A stretch of 56,691 bases of DNA, taken from Vitrella brassicaformis CCMP3155 (Eukaryota > Protista > Chromerida). The stretch spans positions 1 to 56,691 of the forward strand of contig CDMY01000533.1 in the NCBI GenBank assembly GCA_001179505.1, read 5' to 3'. Below, in pieces: positions 1,875-47,312 of this stretch (position 1 is its first letter; each line of letters begins with the position of its first letter). The notes under the pieces are model-generated. The model was given only the letters and a program-made list of their open reading frames with translations, did no database searches and was not told where the DNA came from. Position numbers and translations under genes: made by a program.

Positions 1875-6804
<4,930 letters not shown>

Positions 6805-23189: not shown

Positions 23190-23489
23190 NNNNNNNNNNN
23201 NNNNNNNNNNNNNNNNNNNNNNNNNNNNNNNNNNNNNNNNNNNNNNNNNNNNNNNNNNNNNNNNNNNNNNNNNNNNNNNNNNNNNNNNNNNNNNNNNNNN
23301 NNNNNNNNNNNNNNNNNNNNNNNNNNNNNNNNNNNNNNNNNNNNNNNNNNNNNNNNNNNNNNNNNNNNNNNNNNNNNNNNNNNNNNNNNNNNNNNNNNNN
23401 NNNNNNNNNNNNNNNNNNNNNNNNNNNNNNNNNNNNNNNNNNNNNNNNNNNNNNNNNNNNNNNNNNNNNNNNNNNNNNNNNNNNNNNNN
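23190..23489. other. Assembly gap (300 N)
   Basis: Run of N. Confidence 1.
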
Positions 23490-29914: not shown

Positions 29915-31265
29915 ATGTTCCCCGGAGCGGAGGCGTCGGTTGTTTGTCTGTTGTGTGCGTTGTCAGCTGTCCAAGTGCAACGAGTTGCCGGGTTCGCGTC
30001 GCCTTGGCCTGTTGGCAGAAACCTCGTGGGACAAAGCAGGGCGACTTCTTCGGCGGTGCACCGACAGCCGACACGCCTGGTGGGCTGATGGGAAGATGCA
30101 GCCATCTGGCACAAGTGATGTGCACCTCTCTCTTTGTGTGTCTGTGTCCGGTGTGTTCGTCAGTGGTCAGCAGGCGGCAAGTCAGAGGAAGATCAACAGC
30201 TGGTACACAGAATCACTCAGGCATCAGGAGGGGACGGCTGATCACCTGGGCCCTGTGTGTGAGTGAGTGCAGGAGACGGTTATCGCCGCTCGCAAGAAAC
30301 AGTTTGCCGAGGACTTAGCTGTCATTGACAAAAATCTGAAGTGGTTCCAAAACGAACTGGACACGTTCCACATCAACTTTCCGAACCCGTCAAAGGTCGT
30401 CCTCACTCAGTATCGGCATCACCTGGAGAAGGAGGTCGCAAGGCGCCAGAAGGAGCGGGAGAAGCTGATCGCCAAACGTAAGTGATCCCGAACTCGACCA
30501 AGGCTGGCTGGGCACAGCGGGATTAACGCAGCGTTTCATTGATTTCTGGTTGACCTTTTCGCCATCAGACGAGGAATGGCTGCAGAAGGTCCGAGAGCAC
30601 GGCCTCCCTCACGGTATGCACACGAAACCGGCTGGCAGCTGGGCAACGGCACGCGAACATTCGTGTCTTTTGTGTGTGTGCGTACGTTTTGCGTGCTTCA
30701 TCAGCAGAGGAGCCCAAGGACGAGCCAGAAACAGTCGAGTCGCTCCGAAAGAGAGTGCGGGAGTTGGAGGAGACCGTTCGTTCGATGGAGCGGGCCCAGA
30801 GNNNNNNNNNNNNNNNNNNNNNNNNNNNNNNNNNNNNNNNNNNNNNNNNNNNNNNNNNNNNNNNNNNNNNNNNNNNNNNNNNNNNNNNNNNNNNNNNNNN
30901 NNNNNNNNNNNNNNNNNNNNNNNNNNNNNNNNNNNNNNNNNNNNNNNNNNNNNNNNNNNNNNNNNNNNNNNNNNNNNNNNNNNNNNNNNNNNNNNNNNNN
31001 NNNNNNNNNNNNNNNNNNNNNNNNNNNNNNNNNNNNNNNNNNNNNNNNNNNNNNNNNNNNNNNNNNNNNNNNNNNNNNNNNNNNNNNNNNNNNNNNNNNN
31101 NGGAAGCTGAAAATTGGCTATGCCTTGACCCTATTGTTGTTGCGCGGTCTCTCTCTCTTTGCGTTCGTGTGTGTATGGGTTTTAATTGCGTGGTTTTTCC
31201 GTTTTTGTTTTCTGTGCCTCGTGAGCAATACACACACATGGATGAGACACGCGTGTGCAAGCTGA
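29915..31265 (+). CDS. Family X copy 3 (last exon interrupted by assembly gap)
   Basis: MFPGAEASVVCLLCALSAVQVQRVAGFASPW...TRL|WSAGGKSEEDQQL|ETVIAARKKQFAEDL...LIAK|HEEWLQKVREHGLPH|AEEPKDEPETV...; near-identical to inverted copy 1. Confidence 0.7.
30802..31101. other. Assembly gap (300 N)
   Basis: Run of N; the flanks align to paralog positions only ~47 bp apart. Confidence 1.
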
Positions 31266-31500: not shown

Positions 31501-31696
31501 CAAAAATCATGTCCCTCTTCGCAAGCATGGGGTCCGGAGTCCGGACGATTCCCCGTAAAATCTGACGCAGACCTCAACAGACCAACATCAGATTCTTCAG
31601 ATCTCTTGACCTCATGATGATCCCTTGCTTTGGACGTGGCTTGCATTCGTAAGTATTGCTCCTGAAGGCCTTCCCAGCCCTTCCGCGCGTAACATC

Positions 31697-33948
31697 ATGG
31701 GGCCTCGCCACAATCTGTTGGCGTGCCTTCTTCTGGTTGGGCTCTTCGGCTGCCCACCCACGTCCGCATGGGGGCTCAACCACACACGCGAGCACCTCCT
31801 GAGAAGGCTGCTTGGTAATGAAAAATGGCCCCCTTTCTCATGCCTGCCGTCTCCTGACATTGGTGCAGGTCCTCCTGAGGTATCTGGGGCGTGCAGGTGC
31901 TCTTCATGCGCCGACAAATATGGCCATCATGTGGACATACCGATGAAAGAGAGCCTCAGCGATGAGGATCGGCGTCTCAGCTGCGCCGCTCTGTGCGCGA
32001 GTGATCCAACATGCACCGGTTTTGAGGTGTGGCTAGCGCCTCGAGAGTCCAACTGTGAGGTGCATTGGACACCCATCGACTGGATTGACACATCGGCAGA
32101 CAACATCGAATGCTTCCCCAGACGAGGTGCGCAGATGTACTGATGTGCTGTCTGTGTCACCATGCCTCTTGATGTGGTGCCTGTGCGGTGTTTGCGTCTC
32201 GCTCTCTTAGGCTATGCGCCGGTGGATCTTGTAATTCTGCTTGATCGGTCTCTGTCGGTGAAAAGTAATGGGTGGAGCCTGGAGACGGAATTCACGCGAA
32301 AGCTGCTGGACGCGCTGCCCATTGCCCCGGGAGAGATCAACGTGGCCATTATCCACTTTGGAGCCGACACCTACTATGCCATGCCAGATGAGGTTCATAG
32401 CCACAAAGCCACATCCCCACGCTACAGAATGTCGGTTATCCCATATGTTGCCTATGCAGGCAATGTCGTCCTCTGGCGACTTCATCCAGACAAAGGAGGA
32501 GGCCCTGACGGCCATTGACAACCTTGCCGTCCTCGAGCTCGAGTACGGCACGGACCTCATCGGTGCTCTGCATGCCATGATCACCGTGCTCAAGACCAAG
32601 AGCCGCAAGGCCAAGCAGCAGGGAGAGCTGGTGTCGGTGGTGCCGTGGTTCGCCGTGATTATCACTGATGGCGAGAACACGCACCGCTGCAAGGAGGTCT
32701 CTGGGGAGACCTTCTGCATGCCGTCTGGGGAGTTCGTGAAGTGGAAGCATCACCCCAACTACCGCGGCAAGAACCCCTCATGGGTGGAGCAGAAGATGGA
32801 CCATGTCCTGGTATGTGGAAGGGGAAGGAATAGCCGCACAAATATGTTCTGGTCCCTGAGGGTTTGTCTGTGTGTTAGGCTGAGGTGCCTGAAGTGCGTC
32901 GTTTCTGCATCGGAGTGCGGCTCAAGACACAGAGAGGCCGGGTGAGCGATACACCGATGGATGCACACGTGTGGACGGGATGTCTGCGTGTCAGGATGAT
33001 TTGTGGGCGATGGCGAGCATCCTGAAGGAGGACCATGTGTTTGAGATCCTGAGCTTCGAGCTGCTTGACTACCTCATCGAACAACTGCTCATCCTCATTG
33101 GCTCATTCGAAAGTCAGTCAGTCAGCCAGCGACTGTCAGCCAGCCATTGATTAAGAGGAGGCATTTCTGCATGTGCGCGTGTGTGTGGTACGTGTCAGTC
33201 TGCGGGATAGAGAAGGAGTGGACTGAATGGATTTGCAACGTCGAGTGCGGCCAAGGCAGATACGTCCGGACTCGGATCGAGCGGGTGATGTCCTCACAAA
33301 GAGACCAACAAACGAACCAACGAACGACGGAAGGAGCACCATCGTTGATGGTTGTCCATGTCAATCAGGTGAGCCTGGGGCGTGATTGTGTCGGTGTGGG
33401 TGAGGGGACGTGGACGCGCGTGGTCAAGGAGTTCGACGAGACAGGCGGCATCTGCATCAACCCAAAAATGCCCGTCTGCCCTGACGGTCACGACGTTATC
33501 TGCCGCATTTTGTTGCTGGGCCTCGTGACCTACCCCGAGCTGGTCAAGTTCCTCATCAAACACATCGAGTGGTTTGAAGATATCATCACCAGCTGCGTCC
33601 ACATCAGTAATAATAACAAGTAACCGATACCAAAGGGAGCGATAGGTCCTCTCTGTCTGCAGGCACGTATTGCCCGATGCTGAACGTGACGTACATCAAC
33701 CCGCCGCCGTCATTCCTCGAGCACGTGTACCCGGCCTCGTATTTCGAGCTGATAAGCGAGGAGCTGATACTGCCGACGGTGGACCACACAGTGGAGTTCC
33801 AGGACATCCACAGGGCCCTCACGCACAGCGCGGCCATACCCAATGGAGTGGGCGACATCCACCTCAAGATGGCACACATGTTCACTGACGCGCCGCTCGT
33901 ACAGGTGGATCGATAGATGCATATACACATACACATCCAGATACACAG

Positions 33949-33991
<43 letters not shown>

Positions 33992-36900
33992 AAATACATA
34001 CACACATGCATACGTACATGTACGCGGTTGTTGTGTCTCGTGTCATATACGGACCCCGTCCGTGTGCAGGTGTTTCGAGTGACGACCCAGCGACAGTTCT
34101 CGCCCCTGCTGCCCAAAGAGGTGATCGACATGCTCGCGCACTGCGAAGGAGGTATGCATGCCACACACACACACACTGAAGACACCACCGTTGGATTCCA
34201 CTGCGTCTTTGCCCGGGCAGTGAGTGAGTGCGGCAACAAGGCGGGCATCGAGGGAGTGCTGTCGTCAAAGCTGCCGTCGGCCACATTCACACTTACGGAT
34301 GAGTCGTCTAGCGATCGATTCGCCGCCAAGCTGCAGTGCGTGACGCGGGAAGACGCAGAAGACAACCCGTACGACAACCCCCTGCCACCCACACCAGCAC
34401 CGCCACAAGAGAAACTCAGAGGTGACTCACCCACTGATTGACTCCCACACCCACGCACTCAAGCACACACCTGACTGTTTGTCTTTTGTCCCAGTGTGTC
34501 AGGATCTGAGTGAGTGGTCCGATTGGGAGTGTAACGCCGAGTGTGGCAAGGCCAGCCACGTGCGGACCAGACGGGAGAGGGTCGTCTTTGACACCTCGTG
34601 TGACGACGCCGAGGCGTCTCCATGGGACCGCCGAGCAAAGGAGTTCCGCGTGCCGTCGTCACCCGGTGATGATGGCCTCTGCCGCAGCGACCTTACTCGA
34701 TGCGCTTTCGGTCAGTGAATGGATGAATCCAATCGTCATGGATGTCTTGTCGTGTCGATGTCTGCAGGTGAGCGCACCAAGTGTGGTGGGTGGTATGCGG
34801 CAGCCCCTCACCGGCACTTCGAGTCGTTCCTCTCCGACCTCACAGGCACCTCATGCACCAAAATCAGTGAGACAACGAAAAAGAAAGAGACAGAATTCGC
34901 CACGAATCCTTCGTTCGTCAGGCCAGTACTGCCACCACATGAGCGTGACTTTCGATCCCGGCCACAAGGGGTGCAATCCGTGGTTGGACCTCCTCGAGAC
35001 CTTCTCGCCCGCACCTTTCCTCCTCACGTCAGAGCAGCTCTTCCTGAACGAGACTGCGCACACACTGCGGTATGTAATGGTTGAGACCGCCCAGTCGTCC
35101 TCCCAGTGCCTGAAGGACAGCATTGTGCTGGAGATGGGCAACCTCTACACATACAGGCCAACCATACGCGTAAGTGAGCCAAGCCATGCCAAGCCAAGCC
35201 AAGCCAAGGATAAGAAAAGTGGCTCCACGTGCTCGTCTTCTCTGTGCAGGTCTACCAGTCCTTACCTGGTGGTGGCCGTCTGCTGATCGCCTCATGCACA
35301 GGAGACACACGAACAGGAGCCAACACCAACACAGGTCAGCACAGAGAGAGAAAGAGAGAGGCAAAGAGGGAGCCGGAAACATGCCACACCCACAAATGCG
35401 GTGACTAGGGCTGCATTGTCTGCATTAGCTTGCAGGTGGGTCCCCAATCGCGTGCGACAGCGTCGGCACTCTCGAGGCGCTCGTCAAAGACCAGCGGCAC
35501 CAGGCAACCCTCACGCTGCAGGACGATGCATCGACAACCGTCGAGGTGCAGATGCAATGCATGAGCGACGCGGACCCCGACACGGGACAGCTGCCAGACG
35601 ACCCAAGTGAGCCCTGATATCCCGTGGGTGACCCGCACACCTTTATATGCCCAATTGTTATCCTCAATGCCCGGATGTGTGCAGTGGCCGTCGCGGAGAA
35701 CTTCAGTGAGTGGACTGAGGCCATTTGCACGGCGGCGTGCGGCGTCGGAAAACTCCTCAAGTCAAGGAGACAACTGGTCAGTATGTCGGAAAATCTATCC
35801 ATGTGTGCGTGGGTGTGTGTGATTGCCGCATGTGTCCTTCGTTATCAGGTGAGCCGTCGAGGGTGTTTCATCCGCGGCTTGTACAGGAAGCTGTTCCGTC
35901 GGTGGATGCGCAAGGCCAAGGAATTCGACCTGCCAGTCACGCCTGAATTCTGCAGCCCATACACATGTATGTACGTGCGCACACAGACAGGCATACTCGG
36001 CAGAACATGCGTGTGTATCCATTCAGGTCCCGAAGTGGAGTGCAGCATCCCTTATCCGCTCTTCCCCATCACAAACAGACCTGAACCCAACGATAAACGC
36101 AACTGCCTCTCAGAAGGTACGCGGCTGCATCGGGGGGAGCAGGTGACGACGCTTCTCCATTTCCTTCCATGGCATATATGTAATATGCAGCTGATTTCAT
36201 CACCGGCCTGATCGCCACGTACGACATCGACTATGCCTCCGGCCCCCTGGCCACCCTCCCCGCCCTCTCGCCACAAGAGTTCGGCCTGCACCGGATTGAC
36301 AACACAGACAACGGCAAGTGTATGCTGCTCAGTTACCGCAGCGGCCAGGGGTTGGCTGGCAGCAGCGGCAGCAACATCGAGCTGGACTTCAACGAGATGG
36401 ACACGGACAATCCCACAAGAGTGCAGCTGTACGACCGGGGTGAGGGGAACGGCACCACGACCGCGACGATGCTCGGAAGCTGCGACGGCGACTCCAGGCT
36501 CATTGCTGAAGGTGAGCGTTGAGTGTTGCAGGACATATCAGCATGCTGTGATTGCGTGCCACGTAGGTCCCAGCTGCACCTCCTTCCTGGGACCCGGCAG
36601 CCTGGCGATCATCTTCTACCGGGCCTACGAGCCGGACACTTTCTCGTTCGTAACGTTCGTGTCCATCTGTCAGGGCACACAGGTCGTCTTCACCAACAAC
36701 GGGTGGAAGCGGGATGACGGCGGCTTCAGAGAGAGCGAGGACCGCTTCACCTGGACGGCGCCCACGGAGGTGACGCCCGGCGAGGTGATCACTTTCATGA
36801 GCCTCATCGCCGCAAGCTACCTGCGGCTCGGTGACAATGGCGACCAGATCTTTGCGTACCAAGAGCGCAGTGATGGGGAAATTGTGTTCATTTATGGGGT

Positions 36901-39900
36901 GAACAACAAAGGGGAGAAGGTGTGGCAGGATGACGCCACAAACGACAAGACGTCCAGCCTGCCGTCGATACTGGCCAAGGGGCCTTTCCACATGCCGCTG
37001 AAACAGAACCCCTGCATACGGTAGCGATGCAGACGGACAGGACAACACACACACAGACAGGTCAATATTGATGTCTCTCTCTCTCTTTTTCTGTGCGTGT
37101 GTGAATGTCGTCTTTGCAGGTATCTGGGTCCGACCGAGGGGTCGACGGCCTTTCTGCTGTCGAGCATCGCTGACCATGGGCACTGGGGCTGGACGGACAA
37201 CACCGACGACACATTCATTCCCGCATGCCCATTCGCAATCACCGACGCAGGGCAACCAGGTCCGTCATCATATGACACGGACAAGAGACATATTTTTTGT
37301 GCCTGTGCAGAGAGTGGCTTTTACAGCGGGTCGAGTGCGTGCGAGAACATGGAACAGGTGACGATGGTGCTGATGAACGAGGCCCCCGAGGCGTCGCTGA
37401 CACTCTTCTCAGAACAGGGTGACCAGGTGCGCATGGTCCTCACGCCCGCCGCACCCGCACTCGAAGAGCCACAGCCACCAGACAACACCACCGAGCCGGG
37501 CCCCAAGCCGACAGCCCGGCCCCCTCCGCCCCCCAACGGCACCACCGATGCCGCGTCGTATGTGTTTGAGGGTGGGGAGGTGCTCAATTGCGACGGCAGC
37601 GGTATGGAGCTGTGCATCCCGCTGGCCAACGAGGGGCAGCACATCAACAGCTGGACCTGGAACAACATGGACGACACACAGACCTGCAGGTCGACCATCC
37701 GATGGCGCCAGCCGCCCGGCGTCGAGGCCTCGTCTTTGTACAGCTGTCTCTGGGCACCCCTTGCGCAGAACCCATGCAATGGTGTCCAAGAGACCACCGT
37801 GTGGACGTCACCGGACCACCCCGACGTCCCGTACATACTCATACGCAACACAGCCGGGTCAGCCAGACACACAAACCAAGAGAGAGGAGAGACCGAGGTG
37901 GAGAGTGGCATTTGTGCAGGATAGCGAAGGGTGAGGTGATCATATCTCCTGGGGACACTAGTGTGCGCTACACAGTGGAGTGTCTGTACCAGGGTGGATA
38001 TGGCACCTCAGTCGTGGTGGCCACGGACCAGAGGCAGGCCGTCGTCATACACGGTGAGCCCTGTCTGTCAACCACCCTTCATCACACCGTGGCCACATGC
38101 AAGTGATGTCTCCCGTGTCTCGTCCCTCTCTCTTTCACAGACTTGCCGCTCGGCGCCGTGGCGTCCTTCACATTCGACCAAGGCCTGGCACGCAACCTCG
38201 TCTCAGCATCACGACCTCCCTTCGCCCTCTCAGCAACCGACATGGCCTACAACGGCCCCACAGTGATCAGAGACGGCCTGACAATCCTCTCGGAGTGCAC
38301 CACAGCGTCATTCCAGCTCTTTACCAAGGCGGATGGCACCAGCAGCAGCGACATCGAGGCCTTCACTGTGGTAATGTCAGTCCGTGTGGACACGTGGCCG
38401 GAGGGGTGGGACAGCGCAGTGCCGCTGCTAAGTGTGACGAGGGGAGAAGGGGGCGACTCTGTGGCGCTGCTGGATGCGATCGCCGCGAATGCGACCACGG
38501 GGGACGACCCGAGATGCCCCAATGTGGGCGAGGTCAGGGCGAGCACTGTGTGTGCGGCGGGGCTGGACGTCACCGTCCTGACGCCGCTCACCCTCATTTT
38601 CACCACGGTAAGACGAGGGCGGACCAGGGAACCGCCATGTCTGCATTCATTGCCCTTCGGTTCATCAGACAGAGGGCCTGCGTGTGTACGTGGGGTCATC
38701 GAGGGTGTACAGTGACCCGGCTCTCCGAGTGGCGATTGATAAAACCTCCACATTCACCCTCGGCAGCCCCATGGGCAAGGTCCCCGATGAGACCGGGACC
38801 CTTTTGCAGTCGTGTGATGTTACTGTCGAGAGCCTCTACAGGGGACCGCAGCTCATCACGCCCGATGGGGTGTTCCCCGCACACGGGGCCACTGATGTGC
38901 CTCTGGACCAGCGCACCTTGGTGGCCTTCTTGGACCGGCAATTCACCGTCAATCGCCCCTTGCAGGTGAGACGATGACGGCAGATTTGGTCTGGTGGGTG
39001 TGAGCGCCTGTCTGTCTCTCTAGGTGATGGTCTTTACCATTCCCGCATCCACAATCGACGTGCCGAGCCCACCCCCCGTGTTTGTTGCCCGCTTCACCAA
39101 AAGAGGCGAAGGGAAAGGAGACATGAAGACGATGGTGTCGGTCAGGGAGTCGGTCATGACGGTCAGGCTGCCCCTGCACATGGTCCCGTCCACCCGGTAC
39201 CAAGTCGTCATCCCGGCGGGCAGCGTCGCAGACACACACGGGCAGCTGCTCAAGACGCGCATCGAATGGCGATTCACGACGACCGACGGTAGCCTCCCTG
39301 ACAACAGGTGACTGGCTGGATGGAACGCATGCGTGGAGGTGTGCTGATGTTGTGCTATGTCTCTTTGTGCAGCCCCCCCGTGCGTCTGTCATCCTCCTTC
39401 CCATCAAACGGAGTGACCGATGTGGACCCTAGAGGCCCGATCGTCATTCCCTTTGACGGGCCCGTCACACGTGGGTATGGCGCGATCACCATCCGGCCCA
39501 CGGACCACTCCAACGACACCCACCAATCATCGCTGCGCGACCTTGCCCTCACAATTGCCATCGAGGACAAGTCGCTTGTGCACGTCCAAGAAGACGTGAT
39601 GGTGGTCCACCTGCCGTCCCCCCTCTTCCCCTACACCACCTATGAGACACTGCTTCCCGCCTATTCCCTGTTCGACCATGCCGGCAACCCTCTGCAGCCC
39701 CCGGGCATCTACATCCGCTTCAGCACGTGGGACAACGAAACACTCGACGAGACGGCAGCAGAGGCAGGAGGCGTGCTCTCCCCCAATGAGTGGGACACAC
39801 AGCCGCCGTCGCTCTTGCACTTTACAAGCGTGTCCCCAACCGTCACCGACGTATACCTGGAGATGGTTTTCGATGAGGATGTCCGTGTTGTGCCGGGGTG

Positions 39901-42900
39901 GGTCTACATCGCCTCTGTGGAGGGGCTGGAAGAGAGACCGATGCCTGTGTGGCTGAGCAATGACGCTGTCGTGGGATCGCATCTAGTCGTCAGGGCGGCT
40001 GGTGTGGCTGCCGGCCTGGGGTATAGTGTCATTGTGCCCCGCAGCCGCATTCGAGACCACGCAGGCAACTTCTTTGCTGGACTGAGGTGAGGTGAGGTGG
40101 AAAGAGCGGACGCCGTGTCTCTGTCCTATGCATCAATTATGTCCGCGACACGCAGATACGGCGACAGGACCTTCACCGTCCCTCAGACGACCACCAGCCC
40201 TTCGCCGTTACGTCTCGTCCGTGACCTGTCCTACCCTCCCCCCGACTCCACCCGGCTGCCCCCCACCTCACCCGTCATCCTCACCTTCTCCCACGCCGTC
40301 TGCCGCCCCTCCTTTCCCTCATACATCCTCGTCAAGCCCGTCCAGGCGCCCGGCCGTTCAGCCATAGCGTCTCTTGTCGACACATCAGACAGCGAGCAGG
40401 TGCGCATCGAGGGGCCGTCCGTGTTTCTGAGCCTCAGGCCATGGCTCACGGGCGGCACTATATATGAGATGGTGCTGCTGGAGGGCACCTTAACCGACTG
40501 CAGGGGTGGCAGGTCTCCTCCAGTCGGGGAGAGTGTGGGAGGCGAGGCTTTTTCCTTCTCTGTCGGCGCGCCTACTGACGGCACACCACCCACATTGGTG
40601 CAGCTGTCGCCTGTTGCGGGTTCAGCTGACGTGGAGACATCGCTGCGATCGCTTGTGCTGGCTTTTGACGAGCCAGTCGTCATCGCGCCGCGAGCCACCC
40701 AGTCCATTGGGATATCCCGCGGCGGCCAATCAGATAGGGAGATAGGCCGTGAGCACGTTAAGGCGTTCGGGAGTGTTGTGGTGATTGAGCTGGAGAGTGC
40801 CTTGCGGCCCGGTGGCGATTATGGCGTGTCGATTCCCGTCGGGCTGATAATGGACTATGCCGGCAACGTCTTCAGCTTCTACAGCAAGTGGGAATTCAGC
40901 ACATCCGCTCTGCCGACGGCATCTGCCAGCCCTTTGGCTCTGCTGAGTGCCTTCCCGCAGAGCCTCGCAGTCGGTGAGCCGCTGACTCTTCTCTTCAACG
41001 AGACGATCAGCATACACGTCACCGGCCAGGCAATCGAAGTGCGGCCGACCAACGACGAGCACGCGCCATTCCACATTCGAGACGACGGCTATTTCTACCA
41101 AGGAGAGCTGGGGAGTGCGCAGTGGACCGAAGGAAAAGGGAGCCTCATTGCCACTGACGGCGGGCTGGCGGTGCTTTCCTTCCCCTACCCCCTGGGCCCA
41201 TCTCTCTCATACAATGTCACCCTTCCCGCCGGTCTATTCACTGGTCTAAACGGGTCTTTGTCAAGCGAGACGACCATCAGCATCGACCTCTCTGCAGCAG
41301 CCGATGCCGCCGATCAAGAGCCGCCTCGAGCACTGTATTTCTTTCCTCCGCCCGAGGGCATCCCTCTGGTGTCATCGGACATCATCGTGAGCTTCACAGA
41401 AGACATTGCCCCATCCCTCAATGTGGAAGAACAGCAGCAGGTCACCCTGAAGCCAGATGGAGGGGCCGAGGAAGCCGTCCCCTTCACGATCAAGGGCAGC
41501 GTGCTCATTGCGACGCCTGCATCGGTTCTGCAGCCGTCCACTGCATACACCCTGACCATCCCACAGACAGCCATCACCGACCTCTCGCGCAATCCCATGA
41601 CCGGCGATGTCGTCTACGCCTTCACGACCGGCCAGCCGCCATCCAGTGGTGAAGAAGAGGACACTCGTGGCCCGGCTGTGTTGCCTGGAGGCGTTTTGCC
41701 CCCACAGGACGCCACGGATGTCCCTCCCTCTGTGTCGTTCGTGGTGGTGTTTGACGGGCCTGTGATAGTTGTTGGGGGCGTGCTGGCGTTCGCCGCTGCT
41801 GAGAGGCCTGGCGTGGATCCCATCTTTGTGGATCTGCATGACGCCGAGAGAGTGTGGCTTGGCGGCAGTGCTGGCAACCACATCATGATTGTCGCTCTCG
41901 AGAGGCACCTGCTGCCAGACACACAGGTAGGAGGCGGGGAAACATGGATGGATGGATACACAATCTCTGATTGTGCGTGTCTGTGTGTGCAGTATACCGT
42001 GACAGGGCCACTGGGTCTTCTGGAGGATGCGTCAGGCAACGCTCTCACTTACGATGTCTCAACACAGGCAGGGCGATTCACAACCGGCGCCCCGTCAGCC
42101 GTCCCCCCAACGACGCTCACCACCCCGACCGCCCCCCTGGTCCTCAGCCACGCGGCCCCCATCCCTCCCGTGCAGCTCGACACACCCACGGGGGATATTA
42201 TCCTCTCCTTCCCTCACCCATTCACACGTGGCAGCGGGGTGATTGAGGTGGTTCCTGAATCGATCGACGGTCTGTGGCCCCCATCGCTGTCGTTCGATGC
42301 TGCCAAGCAGACGGCGACCGACATGGACGTCACGAGTGAGGGCCATGTGGGGCTGCTGGGCGGCGGGCGTGTTGTCAAGGTGCGGCTTGGGTCGGTGGGT
42401 GTGCGGCTCACTCAAGGGGGTGAGTACAGGATACGGTCGTCAGAGGGGGCCCTCTTGGTGAGTGAGTATGAAGACTGGAGAACGGACGACCTGAGACACA
42501 AATGTCTTCCCTGCCTTGGTTGCTTTCAGGCGCTTCAGGGCCGCAGCTCCCTGTCTGTCGATGCCTCCATATCAGTGGCCGATGCACCATTAACAGGAGA
42601 CACCGACGACGAAGAGGCATATGCCACCATTCAGCCGCAGAGCGTCACGCCCCCACGTCAATCAACCTCGCCGTCCTCCACCCCCGCATCTATCGTGCTG
42701 CACTTCCCCGCCCCTGTCATCGCCGCCGCCGCCGCGTGCCGCATCTTCGTGTGGCCCCACACACAGCAGGTGGCACCCGAGGGGAGAGCCGCTGTGGACA
42801 GCCAGGCTGTCATCGATCTGACAGACTCAGCAAAGGTGCAAAGCACGGTCAGAAAGGCTGAAATATGCCCCGTGACGTGACATGTGGTGTCTGTTGTGCT

Positions 42901-45900
42901 CAGGGGATGGTGCGTGGAGGTGTGGTGGCGGCTAACGTGCCCTTTCTGCGGCCGTCGACCACATTCAGGGTGCAGCTGCACCCGCCAGACCGATGTCTGC
43001 AAGACGTGGTCAGCCACTCATTCGTCGAGTGGAGCGCGCAGGACGACTGGACATTCACCACTGGCCCCGCTGCTGCAGTCCAACCTCCCAAACTTCTCAA
43101 AAGTGAGTCTTCGCCCCCCAGACAGATCTCACCTTGATGTGTGGCTGTGGTGCATGCAGCCTTCACCGTGCCAGCTGCCGTCCTGTCCAGCAACGCGGTG
43201 CCCGCAGAGCTTTCTGACGCATCAGCCCCCGCCCATCCCGCCATCCTCGTTGCCGTTTTCGACACTCCCATCAGAGTGGCCGAGCGGGCCTTCGGCACCA
43301 TCCGGCTGCCCGACGGGTCTGCACGGGCATTCCACAGCCCGCAATGCGACTCGTTCTGCCAAGTACTCACTGTCCTCTCCCCTGCGGTGCTGTCCCCCAT
43401 TGTTACGTATTTGGTGACACTGGAAGGGCGGTCCCTGCTCACAGACGATGGGAGGCCAGTACAGCAGGGCTATGAGTGGAGTGTGCAGGGCCCTGAGACG
43501 GAAAATGGGGAGGGTGGCGGTGCAGCGACGGCTGAGGTGTTTCCAGTGGCCGGCAGCTCGGATGTGTCCCTCACACCCGTTCTAAGTAGGTGGGCTACTC
43601 TCGTGAGGGGGGAAATCAGCGAACAACTTCATCCATAATTGTCGTGCTGGTGCGGCAGGAGCGTACATGGGCACATCGACGAGTTGGTACCTGACGAGCT
43701 CCCCAGACGTGTCGGTGAGTGTGTCGTCTTCTTCAGCGGCCTTTGCCCCCTATACCATCCCCCTAAACTCTCACCACGTACGCAGCACGCAGAACGCATC
43801 CACTGTGCCTTCGTATGGGGACCAATGAGACACAATGGACGGCTGGACGGATGATCTCTCTGTCCATGTCTATCCGTCTGTCTGTCTGTCTCTTTAGGTG
43901 GGGTCCGTGGGCCCTTTCCTGCATGTGTCGCTGCCATCAGTGCTCCCCCCCTCCCAGACCATCATCGTCACCCTCCCTGCACAGGCCATCAGGACCATTG
44001 CCGACGGCACCCCGCTGCTGCAGTCTGACATCGTGTGGCGCTTCAGCACTGAGGCAGCCGATGGGGGCGGCACAGCATGGGATGGTGTCATCGACAGGGT
44101 GCCCCTACATCGCGCCAGAGACGTGGCGACCGACACACACATGGTTGGATCATTCGGATGCGCAAGTGTATGTGACCATCCGGTATTGTCCAAGGGTCTG
44201 TCTCTGTCGACTTGACTGATTGCAGCGGTTGGTGTTTGACCGGGCGGTCTATCTGGAGGTGGCCCACAATTCCCCCCACATGTTGGCACTGACCCCCATC
44301 GAGAGGGATTCCCTGGTCCCCCAGAAGCAGAGAGGTTCCGTCGATGCTGCCGCCCTACCCACCATCCAAATCCCTCTCAACGACACACAGCAGGCAGGCA
44401 GCCAGCATGCCTTACCACCCCATCCCACATACCGATCTGCCCTTTTCTCAGGTCATGATATCCGGCTCAGTGTTGGTGGTGACACCTCGGCTGCCGCTAT
44501 TCCACGCCACCACTTATAGCGCCACCATCAGCAGCACCGCACTGCTGGACAGCCGAGGGGCGGCGTGGGAGGGTATCGACGGCACCGCCCGTCAGTGGCG
44601 CTTCACGACAAGGAATGTCATCCGTCGGCTCAGTGATGTCACGCCTCCCACACTGCGTGTGACCTCCATACGCCCGGCTGTGAGCAAAACACACACACAC
44701 AGAGACTGTGCCTTAACCTACGTCTCTCTGTCATGTGTATGTGTGTAATGTCAGCCCGGCAGCCGCCATCTGCCGCTGTCGACATCGCAATTTGTGATGC
44801 GGTTCACCGAGCCGGTGCTGCCGGGGAGTGCGGCAAAGTCGGCAGCCGTCAGCTTCAGACCAGCAGACACATCAAAGGACACCATCCACGTCTACACCGA
44901 CGACCCAATGCACGTAAGGACCTATGTGCCGACCGTTGTTGCGATGGATGATGTGTGGACGGTGGCTTGTCACGGTGGGTGGTTTGTCTGATTGCTGTCA
45001 GGTGCGGATTGACGGCAGCAGTGTGCAGGTGTTGCTTCCCCAAAGGCTGGAGCCCTCCACTGTCTACACGGCCTACTTCAGCAAGACAGCCTTCACCGAC
45101 CTCGCCGGCAACCAGGCGCAATACGGTCAGCCACTCTCTCTCTCTGTGTGCGTGTGTGACCGCATCCCTGCCCTCACGCCCATATCGATGTCTGCAGACT
45201 CCCGTTGTGTGGTGGAGGTGACCGACACCGACATAACGGCCGTCGCCCTCAAGACCCTCCCCAACTCCAGCCCCACCCACTGCCGCGCACAGTGCTACCT
45301 CACACCCGCATGTGGTGGCTTCATTCTCATCCAGGGGGACCCACTGAACAAATGTTCCCTCAAGGCCGGCCCCGTCATCGACACACACATCAAACCGGGG
45401 ACAGCCACGTACTACGGGGGCTACATGAGGCAGTGCTGGGAGGTACATGGCTTCCCGGAGCCCACTACGGCCGCTCCTGGGGATGAGGAGCGCAGGCGGC
45501 TGCAGGCCATCGATGAGACAGGTATGGTATATTGGTGTGTGGGGGTGTGGGGGATGAGAAGGCGATCGAGACGGTGATGTGTTGGTTGTGTGCTCGTCAG
45601 TGCCCCACCATGGGTCGTTCTGGCGCTTTGAAACCAAGCCGCTCGCCGATTCCCCATCCACCGAACCCATTGGCAGCCGCACGGGGCCCTTTGCTGCGTC
45701 TGTGACATTCGGCCGTTTTGCTCTGTATGATAGGGACTTTTCTGCTGCTGAATTGCCGCCTCCCGGTAAAGTCGCCTGCCAGCCGCTTGTCTTTCTGTGT
45801 GTGGGAATGTATGGCGCTGCTGCCTCTGCATTCTGCATTCTGCATTCATGCAGCGTCGGTCGCTTCATACCGGAACGGAAGCTTCGCCGTGACGCTGGAC

Positions 45901-47312
45901 CTCTGCATTGACGAAACTTGCGGCGAGACGCAGCAGCTGACCCAGCCCTTCGTGTACCCAACCGACTCCCCAGAGTTCTACGTCAAAGCAACGACTGACG
46001 TACGTGTGTAGGGGTCGACGAGACGGCCTCCTGTCGGTGTGGAAGCTCTCTGTCTCTGTTGTGTTGCAGGTGCCGGGTGTGTACCCAGTGTTTCGTGCGT
46101 GTTATGCGCTGCCGATTCCCCCCTCCTCACCGCTAGAAGAGCTCCTCGAGCGGCGCATCACGCTGCTGCAACTGGCGTGCGGCATCCCCGCCGACCCTCA
46201 GTCGAGTCCCTTCGGCTTCGTCCAGGAGTCCTTCATCGGCCAAGCGTACGCCAGCTTCTTCACCATCGACATCAGTGAGGTGTCGCCCTCATCGCAGCAG
46301 CTGCTCTATCTAGCGTGCGATGTCGACCTCTGTCTCGATCCAAGGTGCCTGGACGACCCTGTCGATACCTGCCCCACTGGACAAAGGTACGTACGATGGG
46401 CAATGCACCCATTGGAAGTTTGATATATCGATGGACGTGTGTTGGTTGTGTAGGCGTCTGCAGGCGTCCGGCGGCGCGAGCGCCTCGGTGCTCACTTCCA
46501 AGGGTCTGCAGATGGGGCCCATTCTGCAGCAGGGCCAGCAGGCCCGGAAGGTCTACCCCGACGGGACCATCTATGACAATATCAACGACCAGGTCATCGT
46601 CAAGGGCAGCTCATGGCGAGACGACACCGACGAGACACGGGCGAACCATCTCCTTCTCTATGTTGGCGTGAGCCTGGGGGCTGCTGCGGTCTTGCTCTTG
46701 ATTGCCAGCATTGTTTACTTCAAGCGGCGTCGGAAAAGGGGGGCAGCACCGCTATTCGCGGCGAGCAAAGATGTGTCTTCTCGTGACGGCCAATTTGACA
46801 TCGATATACCCTCGTCGGCCACCAAGCCGGCCGACCTATCGCCCTCGCGGCCCGCAGCGAGGATAGTGGGACAGTCTACACGTTTCTCTGACCATGGCTT
46901 AGATAACGAGGCAGAGGACAGCAGCCCCGCGTCTGGATCTTCGCATGTCCCTGATGACGCCCCAGTTGAGGAGAGGAGGGGCTCTCATCTGTCAGCACTG
47001 AGCCACCTGCGGATTCTTGTGGGTGCGTCTCAGCGACACATGTCTCTCGGTGACAATCGCGACGATGGCGATGACGATGACGAGTCAACGCCCCTCGGGT
47101 CAAGTGACGGTAGAGAGGCGCTGCCTGCTGGTCTGAAGCGCAGGTCGTTGTCGAAGCATGGCGACGAAGAGAGTAGCCCTTACGCGTCTTCAGAGAAAGA
47201 AGATGTACATGTGGGCGAGGAGACGAGACATCAAGGCGTTGACCAGGGGTTTCGGTCGAGCATCGTGAGTGCGACAGGTGTGCCGGCTGTCAATCTGGAT
47301 GACTTCAGCTAG
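31697..47312 (+). CDS. Giant multi-exon type-I transmembrane adhesin-like protein: SP - PAN - vWA - 3xTSR - bacterial-type module - LamG-like - ~14 Big_5-like Ig - PAN - ZP-C-like - TM - acidic tail
   Basis: Signal MGPRHNLLACLLLVGLFGCPPTSAWG; vWA DLVILLDRSLS...GTDLIGAL...IITDG; TSR WTEW.C...CG.G..RTR x3; Ig repeats xPxxGxTDV...LxFD...YxVxIPxxxxxDxAGN...FTT; TM LLLYVGVSLGAAAVLLLIASIVYF followed by KRRRKR; stop TAG 47310-47312. No second signal peptide or obvious gene break was seen, but not every junction was checked. Confidence 0.8.
32210..32810 (+). other. vWA (integrin I/A-type) domain with intact MIDAS within the giant adhesin
   Basis: DxSxS = DRSLS; T in YGTDLIGAL; D in VIITDG. Confidence 0.9.
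33945..33995. repeat. Intronic (CA)n(TA)n microsatellite
   Basis: Directly visible. Confidence 0.9.
38860..45125 (+). other. Tandem array of ~14 bacterial SbsA/Big_5-like Ig domains
   Basis: Repeated pattern, e.g. SFPSNGVTDVDPRGPIVIPFDGPV...TTYETLLPAYSLFDHAGN...RFST; DGTPPTLVQLSPVAGSADV...LAFDEPV...GLIMDYAGN..WEFST; LQPSTAYTLTIPQTAITDLSRN...YAFTT. Confidence 0.8.
45854..46386 (+). other. Zona pellucida C-terminal (ZP-C)-like domain
   Basis: Two exons: GSFAVTLDLCIDETC...PEFYVKATTD|VPGVYPVFRACYALP...LLQLACG...ASFFTI....LLYLACDVDLCLDPRC......C. The Cys and hydrophobic spacing follows the ZP-C pattern (judged by eye). Confidence 0.6.

What the first reader, a model, noticed from the sequence alone, without database searches (positions are those of the whole stretch)
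31697..47312. Giant TRAP/MIC2-like adhesin extended with bacterial Ig repeats and a ZP-C-like anchor module
Seen: one apparent 15.6-kb gene (roughly 3,500-4,000 aa, estimated) with SP, PAN, MIDAS-intact vWA, three TSRs, ~14 Big_5-like repeats, PAN, ZP-C-like domain, TM and acidic tail. Known: vWA+TSR+TM+acidic tail defines apicomplexan TRAP/MIC2/CTRP motility and invasion adhesins, and PAN/apple domains typify other microneme proteins. Inference: a free-living-relative adhesin combining apicomplexan-type, bacterial-type and animal-type extracellular modules on a long stalk. I know no described protein with this architecture.
Basis: partly seen in the sequence, partly recalled or inferred. Interest (0 to 1): 0.88.

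Follow-up and report, generated by a model that had tools for sequence, protein, structure and literature searches.

The report
Giant mosaic surface adhesin of Vitrella
A single expressed gene of the alga Vitrella, a free-living relative of malaria parasites, encodes a 4,145-residue membrane protein that joins a parasite-type sticky head, a bacterial-type stalk and an animal egg-coat-like anchor; the architecture is real and unusual, but the protein is not a true member of the parasite gliding-adhesin (TRAP/MIC2) family.

Summary
Window 31697-47312 (+) is exactly the public CDS CEM21066.1 / A0A0G4FZK6 of Vitrella brassicaformis: 4,145 aa, 44 exons, named only "VWFA domain-containing protein". 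One spliced RNA contig of 14.1 kb starts 129 nt upstream of the ATG, so this is one gene.

The domain order is SP, PAN, vWA with an intact MIDAS, three TSR-like modules (two followed by a homologous ~200-aa module), four uncharacterised modules (one of bacterial type), 14 Big_5 Ig repeats, PAN, a ZP-C-like module, TM and a 197-aa mildly acidic tail. The dibasic site and the EHP-like motif that follow the ZP-C-like module are conserved in a paralog.

"TRAP/MIC2-like" holds for the head only, where the best solved match is T. gondii MIC2. The tail is long, has no tryptophan and no YxxPhi signal. GAC and ROM4 are reported absent from chromerids. I read the protein as a cation-dependent adhesin or matrix protein on a long stalk, probably shed at the dibasic site.

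No other protein with this full architecture was found. A 2,523-aa Vitrella paralog shares the Big_5/ZP-C-like/TM part. ZP-C homology rests on several concordant lines, none individually significant. The scan has already noted ZP-like modules on other DNA of this genome (at least 15 notes). Both AlphaFold models failed.

The parts
31568..31696 (+). 5' UTR (start of the RNA contig); in-frame stop at 31607-31609, first ATG at 31697
31697..47312 (+). CDS, 44 exons / 43 introns, 4,145 codons + stop (= CEM21066.1 / A0A0G4FZK6)
31697..31771 (+). Signal peptide (aa 1-25)
   Evidence: Hydrophobic N-terminus read from the sequence
31814..32125 (+). PAN/apple-like module 1 (aa 40-125; exon 2, phase 1-1)
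   Evidence: Pfam PAN_4 E 0.02, below threshold; Cys pattern
32225..33081 (+). vWA domain with intact MIDAS (aa 131-353)
   Evidence: Pfam VWA 5.3e-13; aligned with MIC2 and TRAP vWA, DxSxS and TDGE conserved
33112..33500 (+). TSR-like module 1 (aa 364-436), directly after the vWA as in TRAP/MIC2
33501..34420 (+). X1, uncharacterised ~210-aa module (aa 437-646), homologous to X2
   Evidence: 1e-7; no Pfam hit
34421..34772 (+). TSR-like module 2 (aa 647-720; exon 12, phase 1-1)
34773..35686 (+). X2, uncharacterised ~200-aa module (aa 721-920); weak lead to CBM / galactose-binding-like beta-sandwich
35687..36058 (+). TSR-like module 3 (aa 921-1000), the most divergent
   Evidence: no Pfam hit of its own
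36059..36568 (+). U1, uncharacterised module (aa 1001-1127)
   Evidence: no hits
36569..37258 (+). U2, bacterial-type uncharacterised (LTD-like) module (aa 1128-1324)
   Evidence: atlas 0.97, bacterial clusters; 32% identity, E 1e-26, to the N-terminus of a cyanobacterial Big_5/RTX protein
37259..38857 (+). U3 + U4, Cys-containing modules (aa 1325-1770) shared with Vitrella paralog P0030
38858..45208 (+). Array of 14 Big_5 (SbsA-type) Ig-like repeats (aa 1771-3546)
   Evidence: Pfam 8.5e-69; 13 repeats + 1 gap; nearest relatives are bacterial
45198..45445 (+). PAN/apple module 2 (aa 3543-3625; exon 40, phase 1-1)
   Evidence: Pfam PAN_1 E 0.001, model positions 1-65 of 76
45747..46454 (+). ZP-C-like module with 8 Cys conserved in the paralog (aa ~3700-3860)
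46385..46457 (+). Conserved dibasic site RR (aa 3860-3861; its codons lie either side of intron 43), 4 residues after the last Cys
46500..46532 (+). EHP-like hydrophobic motif KGLQMGPILQQ (aa 3876-3886), L..GP[IL] conserved in the paralog
46650..46718 (+). Transmembrane helix (aa 3926-3948)
   Evidence: hydropathy maximum 2.5
46719..47309 (+). Cytoplasmic tail, 197 aa, Ser-rich, mildly acidic, no Trp, ends NLDDFS

Best explanation
This is one expressed nuclear gene of Vitrella brassicaformis. It encodes a 4,145-aa type I membrane glycoprotein assembled from modules of different origin.

Inferred mechanism:
- The distal head (PAN, MIDAS-bearing vWA, three TSR-like modules with accompanying beta-rich modules) binds ligands. 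By analogy with integrin I domains and the TRAP/MIC2 heads, this binding would be metal-ion dependent and directed at glycans or proteins.
- Four further modules and 14 tandem Big_5 Ig-like domains form a long stalk (tens of nanometres, my estimate). The stalk would hold the head beyond the cell wall or glycocalyx.
- The membrane-proximal PAN + ZP-C-like module is followed by a conserved dibasic site, an EHP-like hydrophobic strand and the TM helix. I read this as working as in animal ZP precursors: the protein travels membrane-anchored, and a furin- or subtilisin-type protease cuts at the RR site. The cut releases the huge ectodomain into the wall or extracellular matrix, or switches its interactions.

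Shown: gene structure, transcription, domain content, the paralog, and the bacterial affinity of the Big_5 and U2 modules. Inferred: ligand binding, the stalk role, cleavage, and matrix or wall incorporation.

Evolutionary reading (inferred): a P0030-like Big_5/ZP-C-like/TM protein acquired a vWA-TSR head by exon shuffling at phase-1 introns. The Big_5 and U2 modules ultimately derive from bacteria.
For: Single gene and transcript.

Head:
- Pfam VWA 5e-13.
- Collinear vWA + TSR alignment to T. gondii MIC2 (4okr) and a TRAP (4hqf), with the MIDAS residues conserved.
- The profile of the three TSRs hits the MIC2 and F-spondin TSRs first.

Stalk:
- 14 Big_5 repeats.
- Nearest relatives are bacterial surface proteins carrying T9SS sorting tails or RTX repeats, at 27-33% identity.
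- U2 is 32% identical to the N-terminus of a cyanobacterial Big_5 protein.

Anchor:
- ZP-C is the only additional Pfam family hit in both paralogs (E 0.1 and 0.006).
- The language-model search returns only ZP-C clusters (0.93, 202/256 features).
- Foldseek of the two-sequence model puts ZP modules at 11 of the top 12 PDB hits and 27 of the top 30 Swiss-Prot hits, aligned to their ZP-C halves up to the EHP region.
- 8 Cys, the RR site and L..GP[IL] are conserved between paralogs that are only 27-30% identical here.
- The ZP cleavage/EHP mechanism is taken from PMC4755741 and PMC7456536.

Module borders at phase-1 introns.
Against: - No ZP-C match is individually significant: Foldseek E 0.08-0.9 with TM 0.2-0.3, and Pfam is below threshold.
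- Both AlphaFold models are poor (pLDDT 34 and 36).
- The longer single-sequence model gives only random hits.
- A two-sequence profile finds no ZP protein in the PDB.
- There is no ZP-N, so ZP-type polymerisation is not expected as such.
- Cleavage, localisation and ligands are untested.
- Only one RNA run shows the transcript.
- The bacterial origin of the Big_5 and U2 modules is inferred from nearest neighbours, not from a tree.
Confidence: 0.55

Rival explanations
1. It is a TRAP/MIC2-type motility or invasion adhesin. In this reading it is secreted apically, stays in the membrane, has its tail coupled to an actomyosin motor, and is released by intramembrane rhomboid cleavage.
For: - It has an SP, a vWA directly followed by a TSR, a single TM and a net-acidic tail.
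- MIC2 is among the best solved matches for the vWA and is the best for the TSR profile.
- Small residues (SLGAAA) lie in the outer part of the TM, and a GA pair is conserved in the paralog.
- An aromatic residue (Phe) stands two residues from the C-terminus.
Against: - The tail is 197 aa rather than short, has no tryptophan and no YxxPhi, and has a pI of only 5.2.
- GAC and ROM4 are reported absent from chromerids (PMC9250747).
- Woo et al. found no TRAP orthologues among chromerid vWA+TSP1 proteins (PMC4501334).
- The extracellular dibasic site and EHP-like motif suggest a different release route.
- The paralog with the same anchor has no vWA or TSR.
Confidence: 0.15
2. It is a permanently membrane-anchored receptor or cell-cell/cell-wall tether. 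The ZP-C-like region would be just another Ig-like spacer, the dibasic pair would not be cleaved, and the long Ser-rich tail would signal or bind the cortex.
For: - The long tail has 32 Ser, which could serve regulation by phosphorylation.
- The ZP-C evidence is individually non-significant.
- Some animal ZP-C-containing receptors, such as endoglin, do not polymerise (cited in PMC7456536; betaglycan, PMC3695229, is a signalling co-receptor).
Against: The RR site and L..GP[IL], placed between the last Cys and the TM, are conserved in two paralogs that are otherwise only ~27% identical. That suggests the processing motif is under selection.
Confidence: 0.22
3. It is an annotation or assembly artefact: two or more neighbouring genes, or a bacterial contaminant carrying the Big_5 array, fused into one model.
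For: A 300-N assembly gap lies 600 nt upstream (30802-31101). The Big_5 and U2 modules have bacterial nearest relatives.
Against: - One spliced 14.1-kb RNA contig starts at 31568.
- Word shares in the RNA run fit full splicing in both the head and the Big_5 region.
- 43 short spliceosomal introns keep a single frame, and none is longer than 165 nt.
- Independent DNA runs hold the whole stretch.
- A second Vitrella gene carries the same Big_5/ZP-C-like/TM combination.
Confidence: 0.03

Closest known systems
Apicomplexan TRAP family (Plasmodium TRAP, CTRP; Toxoplasma MIC2)
   Same: Type I membrane protein with a signal peptide and a MIDAS-bearing vWA domain directly followed by a TSR. MIC2 and a TRAP are among the best solved sequence matches. 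It has extra PAN/apple modules, as other microneme proteins do.
   Different: It is 4,145 aa against roughly 500-2,000 aa. About 3,000 aa of non-TRAP modules lie between head and membrane. The tail is 197 aa without the subterminal Trp or YxxPhi. No orthology is reported (PMC4501334). The partners GAC and ROM4 are reported missing in chromerids (PMC9250747).
Vitrella paralog CEL92098.1 / A0A0G4E9L0 (P0030, 2,523 aa, 'SbsA Ig-like domain-containing protein')
   Same: It has an SP, the U3/U4 modules, a long Big_5 array, a ZP-C-like module with the same 8 Cys, the RR site, the L..GP[IL] motif, a TM and a long tail. Identity is 24% over 1,485 aa.
   Different: It lacks the whole PAN-vWA-TSR-X-U1-U2 head and the second PAN. 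The tails are not alignable.
Bacterial Big_5 (SbsA-type Ig) surface proteins, e.g. T9SS cargo of Bacteroidota and the cyanobacterial MAG protein NEQ95214.1
   Same: They have long tandem Big_5 arrays at 27-33% identity. In NEQ95214.1 the U2-type module stands next to a Big_5 array.
   Different: The bacterial proteins end in T9SS sorting domains or RTX repeats. They have no introns, vWA/TSR head, ZP-C-like module or eukaryotic TM and tail.
Animal ZP-module precursors (uromodulin, GP2, ZP2/ZP3, tectorins) and nematode standalone ZP-C proteins
   Same: A ZP-C-like Cys-rich module sits next to the membrane. It is followed within a few residues by a basic cleavage motif, a short hydrophobic strand and then the membrane anchor. 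Foldseek, Pfam and language-model searches all point to ZP-C. The mechanism is described in PMC4755741, and standalone ZP-C in PMC7456536.
   Different: There is no ZP-N, so it is not a canonical bipartite ZP module. It has 8 Cys rather than 4-6. The organism is an alveolate, and reviews treat the canonical ZP module as confined to animals (PMC13361971). Cleavage and polymerisation are untested.

Membership tests
TRAP/MIC2 adhesin family | Signal peptide, single TM, type I topology | tested here: met
   Hydrophobic N-terminus; single hydropathy peak typical of a TM at 3926-3948, followed by KRRRKR
TRAP/MIC2 adhesin family | Extracellular vWA and/or TSP1 domains | tested here: met
   Pfam VWA 5e-13. 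The TSR-like modules are below the Pfam threshold, but their profile best matches the MIC2 and F-spondin TSRs
TRAP/MIC2 adhesin family | Short, charged (acidic) cytoplasmic tail with an aromatic residue, classically a subterminal Trp | tested here: not met
   The tail is 197 aa, pI 5.2, has no Trp, and ends NLDDFS with only a Phe. Definition from PMC9250747; the subterminal Trp is from my own knowledge
TRAP/MIC2 adhesin family | YxxPhi sorting signal in the tail | tested here: not met
   No match in the tail
TRAP/MIC2 adhesin family | Rhomboid cleavage site in the TM; ROM4 and GAC partners present | tested here: inconclusive
   The TM has small residues (SLGAAA), but this is not specific. ROM4 and GAC are reported absent from chromerids (PMC9250747); I did not re-test that here
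TRAP/MIC2 adhesin family | Micronemal secretion and a role in gliding or invasion | not testable with these tools
   Needs localisation and genetics
vWA (integrin I-domain-like) with MIDAS | DxSxS ... T ... D metal-site residues | tested here: met
   D137-R-S139-L-S141, T217 and D256 align with the MIC2 MIDAS segments
Thrombospondin type 1 repeat | WxxW, CxxxCGxG, RxR layers and six Cys | tested here: met
   The alignment of the three copies has invariant W, C..CG, R and C columns. TSR1 and TSR2 have 6 Cys and WxxW; TSR3 has lost one W and the first Cys. The Pfam score is below threshold
Big_5 (PF13205) bacterial Ig-like domain | Match to the family profile above the curated threshold, in tandem | tested here: met
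   229 bits against a 23.6 cut-off; 13-14 copies
PAN/apple | Match to PAN_1 / PAN_4 and the Cys core | tested here: inconclusive
   PAN2 scores 19.3 bits against a 21.4 cut-off over nearly the whole model. PAN1 scores 15 bits against 27
Zona pellucida (ZP) module | ZP-C domain | tested here: inconclusive
   Pfam gives 13-17 bits against a 24.6 cut-off in both paralogs. The atlas search gives 0.93 with only ZP-C clusters. ZP proteins dominate the Foldseek top hits in three libraries, but at E 0.08-0.9 and from a pLDDT-36 model. The PDB profile search is negative
Zona pellucida (ZP) module | ZP-N domain upstream (bipartite module) | tested here: not met
   There is no ZP-N Pfam hit. Residues 3626-3712 hold no Cys. 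In the paralog a Big_5 repeat directly precedes the ZP-C-like module
Zona pellucida (ZP) module | Basic consensus cleavage site, external hydrophobic patch, then a membrane anchor | tested here: met
   RR lies 4-5 residues after the last Cys. It is followed by L..GP[IL] and then the TM, all conserved in the paralog. That these motifs act as in animals is inferred
Zona pellucida (ZP) module | Cleavage-dependent polymerisation | not testable with these tools
   Needs biochemistry

The most novel reading that the evidence does not exclude
The ZP-C / basic cleavage site / external hydrophobic patch / membrane anchor cassette is regarded as an animal invention for releasing and assembling extracellular matrix proteins. 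In this reading it is a genuine homologue that works the same way in an alveolate alga. There it controls the shedding of a giant adhesin built from a TRAP-type vWA-TSR head and a horizontally acquired bacterial Ig stalk. The ZP release switch would then be far older or more mobile than thought. The TRAP-type head would have existed on matrix proteins before it was coupled to the gliding motor.
Probability: 0.3. Interest if true: 0.75.

Novelty: new variant of a known kind. Interest (0 to 1): 0.55.

Why it matters
Chromerids are the closest free-living relatives of apicomplexan parasites, so their surface proteins show what adhesion modules did before parasitism.

This protein shows the TRAP/MIC2-type vWA-then-TSR head in a non-parasite, on a protein that lacks the motor-coupling tail. 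That supports the view that the head pre-dates its use in gliding.

It is also a clear case of bacterial-type surface modules (Big_5, and a U2 module seen in bacterial secreted proteins) built into an intron-rich eukaryotic gene.

Finally, it adds a membrane-anchored example, with cleavage-site and EHP-like motifs, to the ZP-like modules this scan has been finding in Vitrella. Reviews still treat the canonical ZP module as animal-only. The protein is a concrete target for wall or secretome proteomics in Vitrella.

Tried and rejected
- My ab initio exon-chaining model gave 39 exons and 3,820 aa and missed the TSR exons. I replaced it with the exact mapping of the public protein.
- Word-index homologue searches found nothing but the protein itself. 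I tried the full length, the N-terminal 985 aa and the C-terminal 606 aa.
- A metagenome scan with the ZP-C-like alignment found no relatives.
- phmmer of residues 1001-1810 and 3540-3930 against PDB sequences found nothing meaningful.
- A two-sequence ZP-C-like profile against the PDB was negative.
- AlphaFold2 on 3540-3925 (single sequence, pLDDT 34) and on 3700-3900 (two sequences, pLDDT 36) both failed to give confident models.
- blastp self-comparison did not detect the internal repeats. An iterated HMM did.
- The tails of the two paralogs are not alignable.
- I rejected the fusion/chimera and contamination readings; see the fourth rival explanation.
Full report
**What the locus is.** The window is the complete 56,691-nt scaffold of Vitrella brassicaformis CCMP3155. 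A phmmer search with the 929-codon open stretch 40091-42877 against 1.8 billion representative proteins returned one near-identical protein of 4,145 aa, P0001. The collection names it CEM21066.1 / UniProt A0A0G4FZK6, "VWFA domain-containing protein", from a 56,691-nt contig. Mapping P0001 back onto the window gives 44 exons that start at 31697 and end with the stop at 47312. An exact reconstruction gives 42 GT-AG introns and one GC-AG intron of 51-165 nt, and a 12,438-nt CDS whose translation is identical to P0001.

**One gene, transcribed.**
- Of the public runs that hold the sequence, X1-X3 and X5 behave as DNA, with unspliced contigs and word shares near 1 for X1-X3.
- X4 holds a single contig of 14,138 nt that begins at 31568 and skips the annotated introns with GT..AG ends. 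Fifteen joints were listed and six more were not shown.
- The contig length equals 129 nt of 5' UTR, plus the 12,438-nt CDS, plus about 1.57 kb.
- Only 6 kb could be laid, so I computed the share of 31-mers that a fully spliced mRNA should retain. The expected shares are 0.611 for 31650-37600 and 0.889 for 40091-42877. The observed shares in X4 are 0.59 and 0.88. The Big_5 part is therefore spliced and expressed together with the head.
- An in-frame stop lies upstream of the first ATG inside the 5' UTR, so the N-terminus is complete.
- These results rule out a fusion artefact or bacterial contamination for practical purposes.

**Domain content.** On the whole protein, Pfam gives Big_5 (8.5e-69), VWA (5.3e-13, residues 131-353), and sub-threshold PAN_1/PAN_4, TSP1 and ZP-C.
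- vWA: the MIDAS is intact (D137-x-S139-x-S141, T217, D256). It aligns with the MIDAS segments of T. gondii MIC2.
- TSRs: the three TSR-like modules (364-436, 647-720, 921-1000) are homologous to one another and share WxxW, C..CG, RxR and the Cys columns. A profile of the three has the MIC2 TSR (E 0.006) and the F-spondin TSR (0.04) as its best PDB hits.
- vWA-TSR order: the vWA and TSR1 align collinearly with the crystallised MIC2 vWA-TSR fragment. A TRAP structure (4hqf) also matches.
- X1 and X2: TSR1 and TSR2 are each followed by a ~200-aa module. X1 and X2 are homologous to each other at 1e-7 and have no family. There is only a weak lead to carbohydrate-binding beta-sandwiches.
- U1-U4 (residues 1001-1770): four more modules. 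U2 (1128-1324) matches uncharacterised bacterial domain clusters (atlas 0.97). It is 32% identical (E 1e-26) to the N-terminus of a cyanobacterial MAG protein, which continues with eight Big_5 domains, CopC, Calx-beta and RTX repeats. U3 and U4 are shared with a Vitrella paralog (see below).
- Big_5 array: an iterated HMM finds 13 repeats at regular spacing between 1771 and 3546, plus one repeat-sized gap.
- PAN: PAN2 (3543-3625) nearly reaches the Pfam threshold over the full model. PAN1 is weaker.
- Membrane anchor and tail: a TM helix lies at 3926-3948. The tail is 197 aa, pI 5.2, with 35 D/E against 25 K/R, 32 Ser, no Trp and no YxxPhi, and it ends NLDDFS.

**The ZP-C-like module.** No single test is significant, but several agree.
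- ZP-C is the only further Pfam family hit in P0001 (E 0.05-0.1, covering model positions 2-128 of 133) and in the paralog (E 0.006).
- The protein-language-model search of residues 3640-3925 returned only ZP-C clusters (score 0.93, 202 of 256 features).
- AlphaFold2 failed to give confident models (pLDDT 34 and 36).
- Foldseek with the two-sequence model still ranked ZP modules (uromodulin, ZP2, GP2, ZPD) as 11 of the top 12 among 350,542 PDB chains. They were 27 of the top 30 among 550,129 Swiss-Prot models, aligned to their ZP-C halves, and most of the top AFDB cluster hits. E-values were 0.08-0.9 and TM-scores 0.2-0.3.
- The longer single-sequence model gave random hits. That shows what noise looks like, and also that the signal is fragile.
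- A two-sequence profile did not find ZP proteins in the PDB.
- At the sequence level, eight Cys, an RR pair four to five residues after the last Cys, and an L..GP[IL] motif between that site and the TM are conserved between two paralogs that are only 27-30% identical here.
- This layout is that of animal ZP precursors, in which cleavage at a basic site removes an external hydrophobic patch and the membrane anchor (PMC4755741, PMC7456536). My recollection that uromodulin and ZP3 carry a similar "GP[IL]" EHP is from memory and was not tested.
- There is no ZP-N: no Pfam hit, and no Cys in 3626-3712. This is therefore not a canonical bipartite ZP module. Standalone ZP-C domains are known from nematodes (PMC7456536). 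A 2026 review treats the canonical module as confined to animals (PMC13361971). I found no paper linking ZP domains to apicomplexans or chromerids.

**Relatives.**
- A search across the whole length among proteins of 2,280-7,250 aa found only the protein itself. Searches with the head or the C-terminal part alone found nothing.
- Among the 150 best matches to the Big_5 exon, only one shares other modules. It is the Vitrella protein CEL92098.1 (P0030, 2,523 aa): SP, U3/U4, a Big_5 array, a ZP-C-like module, TM and tail, at 24% identity over 1,485 aa.
- The hits I could characterise are bacterial. They sit on Mb-sized contigs, carry T9SS sorting domains, or are named bacterial proteins, and they are 27-33% identical.
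- In P0001 the non-Big_5 modules (PAN1, vWA, TSR1+X1, TSR2, X2, TSR3, U1, U2, PAN2) are bounded by phase-1 introns. The Big_5 array has few introns, they are not in register with the repeats, and one exon of 1,771 nt spans more than five repeats.
- This fits assembly by exon shuffling of a vWA-TSR head onto a P0030-like stalk and anchor, with the Big_5 and U2 modules ultimately of bacterial origin. That history is an inference; no tree was built.

**How it most likely works.** It is a cation-dependent adhesive head on a long Ig-like stalk, anchored by a ZP-C-like/TM cassette. The conserved dibasic site and EHP-like strand suggest that a furin- or subtilisin-type protease sheds the ectodomain into the wall or matrix.

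The TRAP-type reading, coupling to a motor through the tail, is less likely for four reasons.
- The tail fails the family's defining features (definition in PMC9250747).
- GAC and ROM4 are reported absent from chromerids (PMC9250747).
- Woo et al. already noted chromerid vWA+TSP1 proteins without orthology to TRAP (PMC4501334, section 55).
- The paralog with the same anchor has no adhesive head of that type.

**Comparison and novelty.** The protein works partly like a TRAP/MIC2 head, partly like bacterial Big_5 surface fibrils, and partly like a ZP precursor. It is a member only of the vWA and Big_5 domain families. The gene is public but uncharacterised, and I found no description of this architecture. 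I class it as a new variant of a known kind, the mosaic extracellular adhesins of the apicomplexan lineage.

The scan has already noted ZP-like modules on other pieces of this genome (at least 15 notes, some followed up) and a second Big_5 array. The ZP aspect is therefore not unique to this locus.

**Limits.** There is no confident structure. Only one RNA run shows the transcript, and it was laid over 6 kb only. The protein search tools were length-restricted and are now exhausted, so orthologues in Chromera or other alveolates could have been missed.

Noticed in passing
window 30802-31101 and 23190-23489: Two assembly gaps of exactly 300 N. The first lies about 600 nt upstream of the gene's ATG, so the promoter region is incomplete in the assembly.
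   Followed up: partly
window 31650-37600 (runs X11-X15): Marine sediment metagenome runs of 2023-2025 hold up to 38% of the 31-mers of this stretch. Vitrella or a very close relative therefore seems to be present in those sediments.
   Followed up: no
window 44394-44451 (intron 36): This is the only non-GT donor in the gene, a GC-AG intron. The other 42 introns are GT-AG.
   Followed up: partly
window 33905-34069 (intron 9): The longest intron (165 nt) carries (CA)n and (TA)n microsatellite runs. Contigs of several runs break there.
   Followed up: no
exon/intron table, window 31697-37258 and 45198-45521: Module borders in the head and at PAN2 coincide with phase-1 introns (symmetrical 1-1 exons or exon groups). 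This is the pattern known from exon shuffling of animal extracellular modules.
   Followed up: partly
P0001 residues 4139-4145 (window ~47289-47309) and P0030 residues ~2503-2508: Both paralogs carry an N-L-D-D motif near the C-terminus of tails that are otherwise unalignable. It may be a sorting or binding motif, or chance.
   Followed up: no
P0001 residues 262-330 (window ~32685-33010): The vWA domain carries an insertion of about 70 residues between the TDGE strand and the last helix. Part of it is encoded by a 63-nt exon (exon 5).
   Followed up: no
P0001 residues 1507-1770 (window 37856-38857): Module U4 has a very weak Pfam hit to the trans-sialidase C-terminal (lectin-like) domain (E 0.08). 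This is only a lead to a lectin-type fold.
   Followed up: no
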